From Schmidtea nova (Eukaryota): a stretch of 63,638 nt of DNA. The notes below the pieces were generated by a model. The model had not been told where the DNA came from. It saw only the letters and a list, made by a program, of their open reading frames with translations, and ran no database searches. Shown here one piece after another: positions 3,630-63,638 of this stretch. Position 1 is the first letter of the stretch. Every line of letters begins with the position of its first letter. The stretch lies in contig CM097883.1 in the NCBI GenBank assembly GCA_044892505.1, forward strand, positions 231,756,363 through 231,820,000, read 5' to 3'. The translations under genes were made by a program, and so were the position numbers.

Positions 3630-3653
3630 TTAAAAGTTATAAATCGGATTTAA
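3630..3653 (-). CDS. Gene A putative terminal exon (LNPIYNF*)
   Basis: tttcag acceptor, phase 0 matches the upstream exon, TAA at 3630-3632, AATAAA about 100 bp downstream. Confidence 0.5.
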   Translation of the reverse strand, partial: LNPIYNF

Positions 3654-3711
3654 CTGAAATAAAATTTAAATTGATTAAAATTAATACATAATTTAGCAGA
3701 ATATCATTAAC

Positions 3712-3777
3712 CAAAATTTGTTTATTTCCTTCCAAAACTCTAAGTTGATTTAAGAGTTCTTTTGTTTTATCTTCATT
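3712..3777 (-). CDS. Gene A exon (NEDKTKELLNQLRVLEGNKQIL)
   Basis: AG/GT boundaries, 66 bp, phase 0-0; homologous to gene B exon 55078-55001. Confidence 0.8.
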
Positions 3778-3824
3778 CTAAAATCCAAAAATAGTTCATT
3801 AAAACAATGTTTAAGATTATTAAC

Positions 3825-3984
3825 TTTAATTCCTTGTTCTTGTAATATTCTAAGGCGATCATTCCAACTTTCAGTTTCCTTGAAATAACACTCTTTGATG
3901 TGTGCAAAATGAATGTCACTTTGTTTAAGAACTTCTCGATAAATGTTTAAATGTTGACTTAATTTTTCATTTTCTTCTTTATAT
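3825..3984 (-). CDS. Gene A exon, kinectin/RRBP1-like C-terminal coiled-coil motif (YKEENEKLSQHLNIYREVLKQ...ETESW)
   Basis: 160 bp, phase 2-0, the same length and phase as gene B exon 55283-55124; joins exon 7925-7849 in frame (AG+A). Confidence 0.85.
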
Positions 3985-4278
3985 CTAATATATTTAATAT
4001 CAATAAAAAATAGCAATAAAATTTAATTTGCATGTTACAAAAGTTTATAATCAATGTTTACATTTATTGTTTTGTTTAAATAAATTAAAAATAATTTCAA
4101 CAAAACTTCATAAAAATTCGTAAATCAAGCCAATAAGTGAAAATCTAAACAAACAATAGAAATTATTGTATCTTAAAAAAAATTTTACAATTAATTTTAA
4201 TGGTTTTATTTACTCTTCTTTTATTGTGTGACATGCTTCCGGAATCAATTTGCTGACGTTATTTATTGAAATTTCAAT

Positions 4279-4280
<2 letters not shown>

Positions 4281-4358
<78 letters not shown>
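4281..4358. repeat. (TACA)n/(CA)n/(TA)n microsatellite
   Basis: Direct inspection. Confidence 0.9.
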
Positions 4359-4360
<2 letters not shown>

Positions 4361-4530
4361 TAATTATCTTTTTTCACCTTTGATCTTTTTTTATTATTAT
4401 TATCAATAATTCTCATAATGACTATAGATCAAAATTTTTTTTTTATAAACAATAACACTATTGTTATTGTTTATAAAAAAAAAATTTTGATCTATAGTCA
4501 TTATGAGAATTATTGATAATAATAATATAT
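4358..4530. mobile_element. Family-A palindrome with both ribozyme segments deleted from the centre
   Basis: Arms meet at aaacaataaca-ctat-tgttattgttt. Confidence 0.75.
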
Positions 4531-4537
4531 ATATATA

Positions 4538-59344: not shown

Positions 59345-59620
59345 ATCATCAGTACCATTGATGAAATAATAAGTTTTCATTTAAAATACTTTGGCATTAT
59401 CCACCTTATATAGCTATTTGGTCATAAAAATAAAAATAATATCAGTTTCAATTTGGACTTCGGGTCCGTCATTCAGCAACGTAACAAAGTAATTTGTCGT
59501 CAAATGGCGAATATCTGTTACTACCTTTTCATGCACATGATTATTACCCACCTTATTAACAAAATTGTAAATGTGTGTCATAACAGATACAAATCAACAA
59601 TAAAATAGTGGATATTTTTT
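59345..59620. repeat. Copy 1 of a diverged repeat of about 300 bp (copy 2 at about 61295-61615)
   Basis: Shared blocks aataagttttcattt, gacttcggg.c, attatta.ccaccttatta, gtgtcata.cagat.caaat.aacaataaaata.tggatattt. Confidence 0.7.
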
Positions 59621-59967
59621 ACTTTATATAATGCTAATGAATATATTTTTTCGTCACATGCCTTGAGTTTAAGATGTTAAATAAAATTTTAACAAATTAA
59701 TAAAAAATATTTATTTTATGAAAACTAACTTATTATTTCTGGGTATTTTTTTTTGAAGCGTCCAATTAACTTTCACTATAGTATGTCTGTATTTAATTTT
59801 ATTGTCCATACAATTGGAAAATCTATCATTCGGAAATAACGAAATAAAATTAAAAAATGATTGATTTGGATATAAATAATAGGTTAGGGTTAGAAATAGA
59901 CAACATTATGTCATTATAAAATAAAACAACGAATAATTTTAAATAATCAAATGTTAACAATATTTAC

Positions 59968-60046
59968 TTTATTTTTCAATCGTTGTTCGGAAATTTCAAA
60001 ATTCAATTTTTCAATGGAATCAAGGAGGTGACTGGGAGAATGAAAT
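59968..60046 (-). CDS. Gene B exon (FHSPSHLLDSIEKLNFEISEQRLKNK)
   Basis: 79 bp, phase 2-0; homologous to gene A exon 8175-8097. Confidence 0.85.
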
Positions 60047-60096
60047 CTAGTAAATACATTTTTTCTAAAAACCTCTTAAAAATATCGATTAATTAC

Positions 60097-60230
60097 TGAT
60101 CAATCCTAATATCGGAATCGGCTTCCGTTTCAAGTGTCATGGTTGTCGGTGGAATACTAATTATATCTGATTGAAAAATATTAACATTTGCTGTACTTTT
60201 CGATTGAGATTCTGGAATATCTTCACTTGC
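60097..60230 (-). CDS. Gene B exon (ASEDIPESQSKSTANVNIFQSDIISIPPTTMTLETEADSDIRID)
   Basis: 134 bp, phase 0-2, 50-bp downstream intron. Confidence 0.8.
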
Positions 60231-60460
60231 CTTTTGATATAAAAGTCGTTAATTTTTTATGAAATAATTGAGGTTCATTAGAAAATTTTAAGTTGATTAC
60301 GTTATTTAATGATAAACAAGATTAAATAAAATCATCATCCAAGTCAGACTGTTACGTAATATTTTATTGATTATTACTTTCATTCTTGGTAAATTCTTAA
60401 TTCACCTCTTGTTTAAATTATCAATAATATCAGTTTAAACAATTAAATTAACATCCTTAA

Positions 60461-60698
60461 CCCTTTAATGCATGACTTTTTTGTGACCAACAAAAATTCA
60501 AATTTTAAACTTAATTTTTTATTGATATACAGAACATGACATGAATTTTTAATTGTAGTAGTGAAACGAGGCGAAAATTATCAAGATTTTGTCTGTCAAA
60601 TGGGTATAGCAGCATTTGACAGTTAGTTTTTAGTACCAACATAATTTTAGTTGCATTTTATAGGATGTAGCTGATGTGCTACAGTATGCGGTAAAGGG
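60461..60698. mobile_element. piggyBac-type MITE, 238 bp
   Basis: TTAA|CCCTTTAATGCAT ... ATGCGGTAAAGGG|TTAA: TTAA TSD, CCC/GGG ends, 13-bp TIR with 2 mismatches. Confidence 0.65.
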
Positions 60699-61294
60699 TT
60701 AATTTGTATCATTTTTATAAATGAAATAACTTGAAATATGGAAAATTATCTAATTATCATAGATCAAATTTCAAATATTAATTTTTGACCCGAATCATAG
60801 TGTAAAATTAGCTAAAACACATCAATGAAATTTACCAAACCAATATGATTAGAATTTAGATAAATTGTTTAAATAATATAAAATGGTAATCTTGGTAACA
60901 GGGCTAATTAAATATTAATTATTTAATGTTTAAATAATTATTATAACGATTTAAACAATATTTAGCATACTAAATTTTATAAAATAAATTACTTGACCTT
61001 TGGAAGCAGACAAAAATTTTCTAATTAAAATAGTATTAATAAAAGTTTCTAAAAATCCAAATTCCAAGTATATGGAAAACTATTTAATTCCAAAATATAT
61101 TCAATAGAAAATTCTAATAATATCAAAATCCAGCTTCAAAACTAGTTTTATATGTGAGTGAAAAATTGTATTTTTACCCATTAATTTTTTTAGGGGAAAA
61201 CGATAAAAAAAATATGTATCAATCCTTAAAAGTAATATTTCAATCAATTACAAGGATATATGTTCAAATCAAGTATTTAGTGATCTTACTGGGA

Positions 61295-61615
61295 ATCATC
61301 AGTGCCATTTATGACATAATAAGTTTTCATTTTAAATACTTTATCATGTTCAAAGATAGCTGATTGGTCATAAAATTATGAATGAACCGAAAAAATAAAA
61401 AAAATATTATTTTCGATTTTTGTTAGTTTCATTTTAAGTTTCTGTTTCGACTTCGGGCCTTTCACAATCACTAACGTAACTAGGTAAGTTTTCACTAAAT
61501 GGCAACTGTCTGTTATTACTTTTACATGCACCAGATTATTAACCACCTTATTACCAAAATAGTAAACATGTGTCATACCAGATGCAAATTAACAATAAAA
61601 TAATGGATATTTACT
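61295..61615. repeat. Copy 2 of the diverged repeat of about 300 bp
   Basis: See 59345-59620. Confidence 0.7.
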
Positions 61616-63019
61616 GCTATTTACCGCTTTCTAAAAAACTATACAAAAATAATTATTTTGATGAGCTATTTTGTCGTCATGGTGACAACCTCATTTGCTT
61701 CTCCTTAGTTACAATATTAATCATACCAATGCAATTGTGACCCTGGCATGACTACTTAAATTATAATTTTTCAAATAATTTGATGGTATATGACAAACTG
61801 TTTAGATTTGTTACAAGGACTACTTAATTTTTAATCTTAAAATATATAATTTATTTTATCTTAAAATATATATTTAAATTTTATCTGTTAATTATTTTGC
61901 ACATTTTCAGACTATATAGTATAAATTGATATATTCTGAAGAATTGAACGAATTGATTTTTATGTATAATATTCTTCAAAAGTTTAGAAATTTGTAAAAT
62001 CAAATTGTAAAAATCAATAAAACAGATAAAATTTAAACCTGTTTATAACCTAAGCAGTTATATTTCTAAAGTAAAATGACTTAGACTTTGCGACACGTCG
62101 ATTGAAAATTATAGTCTAATATTGTTTAATGAAAACGAGAACAATTATTTTGGCTCAAATGTCATTAATTTCCTATTTTTACAAGTTCTATTGTGAATTT
62201 TGTTCTCCAAATACACAATACTTAAGACTTTCATGAATTTTTTTAGTGATATTGTCAAATTAGTGTAAAAATGAGCAAATAAATATGAAATAAAAAATCA
62301 ATGAAGATAATTATCGGTCAAAAATCAATATTTTTTATTTACAGGGAGAACACAGTCACTTTATACAAGTTATTTTTAGGAAATTTTCTTCAATATAGTA
62401 AACTTGTGTCCGTCTTTCAATATATTAACTTAAGATTTTACCCAAACTCTTACTTTTTATCAACAATATGGCATTTTTAATTTAAAGCCATCTGGAAACA
62501 TTGTACAATTCGTTCAATTACAGAAATTTTTTTTAAAATTGTTATTTATTTCTCTAAATTTAAAATTTAGGAAATATATTTCTTTAAAAAAAATCTATTT
62601 TACATAAATTAATATGTAATTTCAATTAAAAGACACGTTGACTTGAAAATGAGAGAAAAACAACAATATATAAAATCAATATAACAGGAAATGAATAAAT
62701 TCATTATTTAAAAAATCAACATTATTGAAAAATCGCTAAATCAACATTAATCCTTTATATGTTCGGATAAATCCGAATCCCTTTGTGTGCGGTTCTCAAG
62801 GGCGATATTCGGATTTTACATAATGAATTTTGTATAAAAATTAATCATTTTTACTATATAATTGACTTATTGTGTGACTACATGAAATCTTATTCGTCAG
62901 TTAAGGGGTTAAATAGAAAATCAATATAATTGGAAAATCAATATCAAATAAAAAATCAATGTTATGGAAATAATATTTAATTGATATTTCATTCAAAAAA
63001 ACTAATTAAAATTACTCAC

Positions 63020-63638
63020 AATGGCAGTATTTTTTAATTCGTAATATTTTCGCTGAAGAGCTAGCAATTCCGACTCAAGTTTGACAATGTGGGATTTCAT
63101 TTCTTCACTGGTACGATCACAGTTTGCAAAAGACTCGGTTGGTCTGACATAGGTTCCTTGAATAAAACTCTCAACAGGGGCAATAATTTCCAATTGTTGA
63201 CGACTCAAATCTATTGATTCTCGCAATTCTTTTTCCAATTGTTCGTATTTGGTTTTCCATTCAGTGTTTAATTCATTGACTTTCCTTTCAAGATTTCCAT
63301 TCAACTCATCATTTTGACGTTTCAAGTTCTCATTGGCTTTAACTAACTGCGATTTCAATTCACGTGTTTCACGTTCAACCTTCAACAGCTCTGCATTTTT
63401 CTCTTCCAGTTGCTTGGAAACGCTCTCAAACTCAACTTTCGATTTGGAATTCTGTAAATTAATTTCATTTTCACTGTTTGACTTTTTCAAATCTTCTATT
63501 TTTTTCTCAAATTGATTCTTTTCCTTTACCAGTTCTGCGATAACGATTTCATTATCCTTTAATTTTTGTGTTAATTCGATAATTTTCTCATTGGCTGAAT
63601 AATCCCTAGAAATATTTTCATTTTTCAAATGATCGATT
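63020..63638 (-). CDS. Gene B large coiled-coil exon, 3' part (open to the window edge); counterpart of gene A's giant exon
   Basis: Frame is open to 63638 with an ATT|gtgagt donor. ANEKIIEL matches the repeat's ANEKLVEL, and HIVKLESELLALQRKYYELK matches HIECLERELLHLQSKYFKLK at the end of the giant exon. Confidence 0.85.

What the first reader, a model, noticed from the sequence alone, without database searches (positions are those of the whole stretch)
3630..63638. Two tandem paralogs with the same 3' exon architecture and a kinectin/RRBP1-like C-terminal module
Seen: exons after the large exon match one-to-one in phase and often in length. Gene A has 110/79/84/77/160/66 bp and gene B has 134/79/84/113/160/78 bp. 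Shared motifs include LDSIEKLN.EI.EQR, F..LLK, EEN..L...L..YRE.L...W and E.K.KELL.Q. The 160-bp exon resembles the KTN1/RRBP1 segment recalled as YxSxLAETEGxLxxLQxSVExEExxW, and gene B fits it better than gene A. Inference: an old tandem duplication left gene B closer to the ancestral protein while gene A diverged and expanded internally.
Basis: partly seen in the sequence, partly recalled or inferred. Interest (0 to 1): 0.75.

Follow-up and report, generated by a model that had tools for sequence, protein, structure and literature searches.

The report
Tandem coiled-coil paralogs with kinectin-like site
Two neighbouring, related genes for long rod-shaped proteins sit head to tail in an AT-rich animal-like genome. 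One grew to about 10,000 residues by a very recent 28-fold repeat, and the other keeps a short segment that resembles the docking site kinectin uses for a translation factor and a dynein adaptor.

Summary
For A's 77-bp exon, a 98-bp version fits B better. Intron phases are identical (0,2,0,0,2,0). The tails align at SW 283 against 67±10 for shuffles. No N gap interrupts a modelled exon, but B's proposed stop (TAG 53502) lies across a gap and is unverified.

Gene A's large exon (39971..11334) holds 28 near-identical 999-bp units.

The kinectin claim is only partly supported. Pfam and PDB gave no credible match. One exhaustive HMMER search of 1.84 billion proteins, using the 160-bp and 78-bp exons, found no KTN1/RRBP1 hit at E≤0.001. 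Its only real hit was a B-like exon from a metagenome contig.

However, a paper prints the 41-residue EEF1D-binding domain of KTN1. By eye it aligns without gaps to residues 1-41 of B's 160-bp exon: 17/41 identical for B, 11/41 for the metagenome relative and 7/41 for A. That is far above a generic coiled-coil background.

The KIF5-binding region that follows this site in KTN1 has no room here, and no N-terminal anchor is visible. I read this as tandem paralogs with a kinectin-type docking site. Family membership is unproven.

The parts
63020..63638 (-). Gene B, 3' part of its large exon (206 codons, runs off the window end); donor GTGAGT, phase 0
   Evidence: Open frame 63637..63020. Its last 30 residues are 14/30 identical to the end of A's giant exon, z 8.5.
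60097..60230 (-). Gene B 134-bp exon (non-helical, Ser/Thr/Pro-rich linker)
   Evidence: AG/GTAATT borders, phase 0 in and 2 out. Weak similarity to A's 110-bp exon (z 1.7).
59968..60046 (-). Gene B 79-bp exon (LDSIEKLN motif)
   Evidence: 16/26 identical to A, z 10.7. Borders.
58078..58161 (-). Gene B 84-bp exon (F..LLK motif)
   Evidence: 10/28 identical to A, z 6.7.
57915..58027 (-). Gene B 113-bp exon
   Evidence: Strong acceptor GTGCAG and donor GTAATT, phase 0 in and 2 out.
55124..55283 (-). Gene B 160-bp exon. Residues 1-41 resemble the EEF1D/CDR2-binding site of kinectin.
   Evidence: Borders. 35/53 identical to metagenome ORF P0001. 17/41 ungapped identities to the KTN1 peptide printed in PMC13231004 (counted by eye). 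Chance estimate.
55001..55078 (-). Gene B 78-bp exon (E.K.KELL.Q motif), an internal exon with donor GTATGC
   Evidence: 45-nt intron before it. L001 has the same 78-bp exon followed by GTAAGT.
53502..53603 (-).
   Evidence: Acceptor-like TAATTAG, GC 0.36 against 0.24 in introns. It is separated from the 78-bp exon by gap 54042-54877. The TAG overlaps a GTAAAG donor-like site. An alternative end is CTA TGA at 54932..54927 after a 68-nt intron.
40014..40127 (-). Gene A upstream exon (38 codons), joined in phase 0 to the giant exon by a 42-nt intron
   Evidence: Sequence reading. A's true start lies further upstream and is unresolved.
11334..39971 (-). Gene A giant exon (9546 codons); donor GTTTGT, phase 0, at the position homologous to B's donor
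   Evidence: ORF 39971..11175. Donor.
11562..39553 (-). 28 tandem units of 999 bp (333 residues) inside A's giant exon
   Evidence: Period 333 aa at 99.7% match. 0-5 differences per unit, and units 2-10 are identical. One unit is predicted as long helices with two disordered linkers, pLDDT 70. The unit aligns to B's large exon at z 6.3.
8217..8326 (-). Gene A 110-bp exon
   Evidence: AG/GTAAGA borders, phase 0 in and 2 out.
8097..8175 (-). Gene A 79-bp exon
7971..8054 (-). Gene A 84-bp exon
7828..7925 (-). Gene A fourth small exon: 98 bp (donor GTATGC), or 77 bp if the donor GTTACG at 7848 is used
   Evidence: Both options keep phase 2. The 98-bp form keeps residues that align with the end of B's 113-bp exon.
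3825..3984 (-). Gene A 160-bp exon, a degenerate copy of the kinectin-like site
   Evidence: 13/53 identical to B, z 4.8. 7/41 to the KTN1 peptide by eye.
3630..3777 (-). Gene A 66-bp exon (3777..3712), a 58-nt intron and a 24-nt end piece to TAA at 3630. If unspliced, the stop is at 3639..3637.

Best explanation
Shown: two head-to-tail paralogous genes on the minus strand encode long alpha-helical rod proteins. They come from a tandem duplication that kept the whole 3' exon-intron architecture. B, the upstream copy, stayed close to the ancestral sequence. A diverged and very recently multiplied a 333-residue helical unit 28 times within one 28.6-kb exon, giving a protein of roughly 10,000 residues.

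Inferred: the first 41 residues of the 160-bp exon are the counterpart of the kinectin segment that docks a short helix of a partner. In kinectin that partner is either the exon-5 helix of elongation factor EEF1D (eEF1B-beta/delta) or the C-terminal helix of the dynein adaptor CDR2.

Inferred mechanism: the protein forms a parallel dimeric coiled coil. Its last coiled-coil segment binds such a helix and so tethers the elongation-factor complex or a dynein adaptor to whatever the N-terminus is attached to. That N-terminus is unseen: it lies off the window for B and is unresolved for A.

A's site is degenerate, so A has probably lost or changed this binding and acts mainly as a very long spacer.
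For: - Paralogy and architecture: identical phases, equal 79/84/160-bp exons, and tail alignment 283 against 66.7±9.6.
- B is ancestral-like: P0001/L001 is much closer to B than to A.
- Expansion: 28 x 999 bp, nearly identical. The unit is helical.
- Docking site: the KTN1 EEF1D-binding domain printed in PMC13231004 aligns ungapped to B exon residues 1-41 with 17 identities, 13 of them in the last 21 positions. These include the Y, the SV.QEEN.WK stretch and the W. The BLOSUM62 sum is about 91 by hand. The exact P(>=91) is 8.5e-14 per register.
- KTN1 and RRBP1 both bind EEF1D through this region, and CDR2 competes for it. The site is stated to be conserved in p180, and the CDR2 helix to be conserved in invertebrates.
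Against: - The unbiased search found no KTN1/RRBP1 at E≤0.001 in 1.84 billion proteins.
- Pfam gave no family for any exon, and PDB gave nothing.
- The KTN1 comparison was made by eye on 41 residues from one paper, not with a tool.
- The closest relative (P0001) keeps only 11/41 and A only 7/41, so several of B's matches are not conserved within the family.
- The KIF5-binding region that follows the site in KTN1 has no counterpart. Only about 38 known residues follow it in B.
- No membrane anchor was seen.
- The 3' end of B, the 5' end of A and the independence of the two genes rest on sequence reading alone.
Confidence: 0.5

Rival explanations
1. The two genes are tandem paralogs of a lineage-specific coiled-coil protein with no relation to kinectin/RRBP1. 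The 41-residue match is chance or convergence between Glu/Lys/Gln/Leu-rich heptad sequences.
For: There is no library-wide significant hit to KTN1/RRBP1 and no Pfam or PDB support. P0001 and A lose many of B's matching residues. The architecture differs, with the site near the C-terminus and no KIF5-binding region.
Against: The ungapped score of about 91 is twice the best generic coiled-coil window seen (44) and far beyond random 41-mers of the same composition. The matches include rare residues (W, Y, N). The alignment starts at the exon's first codon and spans exactly the published functional domain.
Confidence: 0.3
2. A and B are one very long gene with an internal duplication of the tail module. 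B's 78-bp exon splices onward into A's 5' exons instead of ending a transcript.
For: B's 78-bp exon ends in a donor that is conserved in L001. It ends in phase 0, and A's upstream exon 40127..40014 starts in phase 0. No promoter, start codon or polyadenylation site was established between the two. Three gaps lie in the interval.
Against: A's own copy of this exon is followed within 58 nt by a short end piece with a stop, and B has a comparable option 68 nt downstream (CTA TGA). About 15 kb of transposon remnants separates the exon sets. Phase compatibility alone has a 1 in 3 chance.
Confidence: 0.12
3. Gene A's array, or gene A as a whole, is not a working gene. It could be a decaying duplicate, or its repeat number could be an artefact of assembly.
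For: Units 2-10 are base-for-base identical, which is unusual. By my reading of the protein variants, most of the few differences between units change the residue. An open frame across identical copies proves only that one unit is open. A's docking site is degenerate.
Against: All A exons keep open frames, usable splice sites and phases. The unique ends of the giant exon, several hundred codons, are open in an AT-rich genome. Shared variant patterns between units suggest a real higher-order array.
Confidence: 0.06

Closest known systems
Kinectin (KTN1), EEF1D/CDR2-binding site (residues about 1114-1165 of the 1357-residue human isoform, as given in PMC11580933 and PMC12768868)
   Same: Both are long dimeric coiled-coil proteins. 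B's 160-bp exon matches the published 41-residue binding domain at 17/41 positions without a gap. Both gene tails are built of many small exons (for KTN1).
   Different: In KTN1 about 200 residues follow the site, including the KIF5-binding region 1188-1288. Here only about 38 known residues follow. No N-terminal membrane anchor or Lys-rich N-terminal region was seen. There is no unbiased significant hit. KTN1 has nothing like the 28 x 333-residue array.
RRBP1 / p180 ribosome receptor
   Same: It is the paralog of KTN1. It binds EEF1D and is said to conserve the same binding site. It also carries a large tandem repeat array in one exon (own knowledge).
   Different: Its repeats are decapeptides that bind ribosomes and are unrelated to the 333-residue helical unit here (own knowledge). 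Pfam PF05104 was not found in any piece. No RRBP1 sequence was available by reference, so it was not compared.
P0001 / L001, an unannotated ORF on a 734-bp ENA metagenome contig (ERZ27256860)
   Same: It is the only true relative found. It has the same 160-bp exon, a short intron (53 nt against 45) and a 78-bp exon with a donor. It is 69% identical in DNA over 310 nt and 66% in protein to B.
   Different: It comes from another species (GC 0.31). Nothing conserved lies downstream of the 78-bp exon. The rest of that gene is unknown.

Membership tests
Kinectin/RRBP1 family | Single N-terminal transmembrane anchor in the ER membrane | not testable with these tools
   B's 5' part is off the window. 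A's 5' exons above 40127 are unresolved and a gap lies at 40716-41131. No hydrophobic anchor is present at the start of the giant exon.
Kinectin/RRBP1 family | Lys-rich region after the anchor (Pfam PF05104 in RRBP1) | tested here: inconclusive
   No PF05104 hit in any piece scanned, but the N-termini are missing. The Lys-rich ORF at 53603..53502 is unassigned.
Kinectin/RRBP1 family | Long cytosolic coiled-coil rod | tested here: met
   Glu/Leu/Lys-rich composition. Only sub-threshold coiled-coil Pfam matches. AlphaFold2 model of one repeat unit shows helices of 60-83 residues.
Kinectin/RRBP1 family | EEF1D / CDR2 helix-binding site in the last coiled-coil segments | tested here: inconclusive
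   17/41 ungapped identities of B to the published KTN1 domain, counted by eye, with per-register chance 8.5e-14. No tool-run alignment was made, no hit appeared in the unbiased search, and binding was not tested.
Kinectin/RRBP1 family | KIF5 (kinesin-1) binding region C-terminal to that site (KTN1 1188-1288) | tested here: not met
   After the site, B has 12 residues of the 160-bp exon and 26 of the 78-bp exon, and A has 12 + 22, followed by at most a short end piece. About 100 residues would be needed. A hidden exon in gap 54042-54877 cannot be excluded.
Kinectin/RRBP1 family | Significant sequence match to family members in an unbiased search | tested here: not met
   phmmer of the 160-bp and 78-bp exons against 1.84 billion representatives gave only P0001 and two generic repeat proteins at E≤0.001. 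Word searches were blank.
Tandemly duplicated paralogs | Adjacent, same strand, significant similarity, conserved intron positions and phases | tested here: met
   phases 0,2,0,0,2,0 in both genes, equal 79/84/160-bp exons, z about 22 for the tails.

The most novel reading that the evidence does not exclude
B, and formerly A, is the kinectin-type receptor of a poorly sampled invertebrate lineage. It would be the partner that explains why the CDR2 C-terminal helix and the EEF1D helix are conserved outside vertebrates. It would show that the ancestral module was only the helix-docking site, with kinesin binding added later. A would then be a sister copy turned within very recent time into a roughly 10,000-residue spacer.
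Probability: 0.25. Interest if true: 0.7.

Novelty: new variant of a known kind. Interest (0 to 1): 0.5.

Why it matters
If the 41-residue match is real homology, it gives a concrete and cheaply testable function to an otherwise unannotatable coiled-coil gene pair: docking of the EEF1D helix or of a CDR2-like dynein adaptor.

It would also place the kinectin/p180 docking site in a lineage with no annotated relatives in 1.84 billion protein representatives. That bears on how ER-sheet organisers evolved.

Gene A is in addition a clean example of a very recent expansion: 28 kb of nearly identical 999-bp coding units inside a single exon, next to an unexpanded paralog that serves as a built-in control.

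If the match is chance, this is an ordinary lineage-specific tandem duplication of a coiled-coil gene.

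Tried and rejected
- Pfam on every exon and on pieces of the large exons gave nothing above cut-off. The HARP hit (26.6 bits) on A is a sum over repeated units with no single stretch passing, so I rejected it.
- PDB by sequence and by a 3-sequence profile gave only a phage portal protein and a designed Kelch repeat matched six times on 12 residues. Both are spurious.
- Two word searches were blank: a 1200-residue slice of A's tail, region 700-1200, and B's 206-residue exon part. 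Their length limits mean this says nothing about longer or shorter relatives.
- In the big HMMER search, P0002 (17 weak stretches in a repeat protein) and P0003 (a bacterial repeat protein matching partly intron-derived residues) are generic.
- A scan of JGI metagenome contigs with the exon alignment found no relative.
- L001 downstream of the 78-bp exon shows no conservation with the window, so it did not settle the last exon.
- A crude codon-usage score, trained on these same exons, found no convincing extra exons. Neither A's upstream exon nor the Lys-rich ORF reached the stricter cut-off of 14.
- The ORF 58409..58305 in B's intron is phase-compatible but has no counterpart in A, so I did not adopt it.
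- A C-terminal tail anchor was considered. The hydrophobic read-through peptides of A and L001 are not conserved and B stops after 3 codons, so I rejected it.
Searches were exon by exon, by reference.

Full report
**What the window is.** The window is AT-rich (GC 0.16-0.36) with seven runs of N. It has short introns of 41-68 nt beside long introns filled with transposon remnants. It is clearly not human, and neither is the one related contig fetched (L001, GC 0.31). The species is unknown. No annotated relative exists in the protein collections searched.

**Checking the observation.** Both genes are on the minus strand.

Gene A holds a 9598-codon ORF (39971..11175). Its real exon ends at 11334, at a GTTTGT donor. 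That donor sits four codons after a conserved L-K, exactly where B's large exon ends at GTGAGT (63020).

- A: 110, 79, 84, 77 (or 98 with the next donor), 160, 66.
- B: 134, 79, 84, 113, 160, 78.

Intron phases are 0,2,0,0,2,0 in both genes. The four quoted motifs are present in both.

The joined tails were aligned only inside a local script. They score 283 against 66.7±9.6 for shuffled sequence. Taken exon by exon, the end of the large exon and the 79-, 84-, 160-bp and last exons are each significant on their own. The 110/134 and 77/113 pairs are weak and rest on position and phase. For A's fourth small exon, the 98-bp form (donor GTATGC at 7827) keeps seven residues that align with the end of B's 113-bp exon.

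**Gaps.** None of the N runs falls inside a modelled exon.
- Two lie in A's first 3' intron and one in B's 113-to-160 intron. The edges at 9060, 9229 and 57304 abut copies of one palindromic dispersed repeat.
- The exons on both sides have their own splice sites and matching phases, so the reading frame does not depend on gap length. An exon hidden in a gap cannot be excluded.
That stop is therefore a guess.
- A nearer option exists: a 68-nt intron followed by CTA TGA. It is comparable to A's 58-nt intron plus a 24-nt end piece that stops at 3630.
- The TAG itself overlaps a GTAAAG donor-like site, so the Lys-rich ORF could belong to something else.
- No gap was filled or looked up.

**Gene A's expansion.** The giant exon contains 28 units of 999 bp (39553..11562). 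Each has 0-5 differences from the consensus, and units 2-10 are identical. One unit is predicted as five long helices with two disordered linkers (pLDDT 70). The unit aligns weakly but above shuffles to B's large exon (z 6.3).

An upstream exon (40127..40014) joins the giant exon in phase 0 through a 42-nt intron. The ATG at 39971 is therefore probably not the start, and A's 5' end is unresolved.

**Searching for relatives.** The joined protein was not sent to any search or fold tool.
- Pfam found nothing above cut-off for any piece.
- PDB gave only spurious matches.
- Two word searches were blank within their length limits.
- The one exhaustive HMMER job used B's 160-bp exon, the 45-nt in-frame intron and the next exon (97 residues, by reference). 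It returned three proteins at E≤0.001 out of 1.84 billion. Two are generic repeat proteins.
- The third hit, P0001, is a 73-residue ORF on a 734-bp ENA metagenome contig.

That contig carries the same 160-bp exon, a 53-nt intron and a 78-bp exon followed by GTAAGT. It is 69% identical in DNA to B over 310 nt. It also shows that B is the conservative copy: 35/53 and 18/26 identities to B, against 15/53 and 10/22 to A.

A full-text search for the recalled motif found one paper (PMC13231004). It prints the 41-residue 'EEF1D binding domain' deleted from human KTN1. I compared it by eye with the exon translations.

It aligns without a gap to residues 1-41 of B's 160-bp exon, starting at the exon's first full codon. 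B has 17 identities, 13 of them in the last 21 positions. P0001 has 11 and A has 7. My hand sum of BLOSUM62 scores for B is about 91.

Controls that did not need the peptide:
- 200,000 random 41-mers of coiled-coil composition reach at most 37.
- The exact probability of 91 or more is 8.5e-14 per register with coiled-coil composition.

Over the whole library this is borderline, which agrees with HMMER's silence. For a named candidate family it is strong. I put true homology of this segment at about two in three. The doubts are that the count is by eye, that it rests on 41 residues, and that several of B's matches are not kept in P0001.

**What the segment does in kinectin.** The region (1114-1153 in PMC11580933; 1125-1165 in PMC12768868) binds the exon-5 helix of EEF1D and, in competition, the C-terminal helix of the dynein adaptor CDR2. 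The site is reported as conserved in p180/RRBP1, and the CDR2 helix as conserved in invertebrates. KIF5 binds a separate region further on, 1188-1288.

From this follows the proposed mechanism: a dimeric rod whose last coiled-coil segment docks such a helix. The differences are plain:
- Here the site lies about 38 known residues from the end, so there is no room for a KIF5-binding region.
- No membrane anchor or Pfam PF05104 region is visible.
- RRBP1 itself could not be compared.

I therefore do not file the genes as kinectin family members. I describe them as carrying a kinectin-type docking site.

**One gene or two.** B's 78-bp exon ends in phase 0 and A's upstream exon begins in phase 0, so a read-through fusion is frame-compatible. 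I cannot exclude it. About 15 kb of transposon remnants lies between them, and short end pieces with stops follow both copies of the last shared exon. This makes two genes more likely.

**Verdict.** This is a real, well-observed tandem duplication with a striking recent repeat expansion in one copy. There is a plausible but unproven link to the kinectin/p180 docking site.

Noticed in passing
window 45084-45294 (-): A fragment of the 3' domain of eukaryotic 18S rRNA (Rfam RF01960, 108 bits) sits inside the transposon cluster between the two genes. It ends just before the universally conserved CACCGCCCGTC stretch. It may be a remnant carried along by an rDNA-targeting element.
   Followed up: partly
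window 1-169, 940-1129, 4369-4724, 9061-9228, 56471-56897, 57055-57303: Copies of one palindromic, MITE-like dispersed repeat with internal microsatellites (75-93% identical). Three of the gap edges abut it, which probably explains those assembly breaks.
   Followed up: partly
window 9554-10388; 43887-44211 (-): GIY-YIG ORFs (weak Pfam PF01541 match), possibly Penelope-like, arranged as an inverted pair inside A's first 3' intron. A further remnant lies upstream of A.
   Followed up: no
window 6117-7500 (-) and 47389-48436 (+); 41953-42150 (-): Remnants that read like a Ty3-type reverse transcriptase/RNase H/integrase (no Pfam family matched) lie in A's 3.8-kb intron, with a related copy on the other strand between the genes. 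A DDE transposase-like remnant lies at 41953-42150.
   Followed up: no
window 58305-58409 (-): An open, coiled-coil-like ORF in B's 1.8-kb intron, with an acceptor and two phase-0 donors (36 or 105 nt). The matching A intron is only 42 nt, so there is no counterpart. It could be an alternative exon or chance.
   Followed up: partly
window 53420-53704 (-): The Lys/Arg-rich stretch is open in two frames (33 and 95 codons). Its TAG overlaps a GTAAAG donor-like site. It could be B's last exon, an early exon of A, or neither.
   Followed up: partly
window 12580-38554 (-): Variant sites in the 999-bp units recur in sets (unit positions 516/539/541, sometimes with 667). This marks two unit types that alternate irregularly in the 3' half of the array, while units 2-10 are identical. 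The pattern points to several rounds of unequal exchange.
   Followed up: partly
window 44580-45105 (+): Two ORFs (117 and 67 codons) with Cys-rich motifs lie next to the 18S fragment. They have no Pfam match and may be part of the same mobile element.
   Followed up: no
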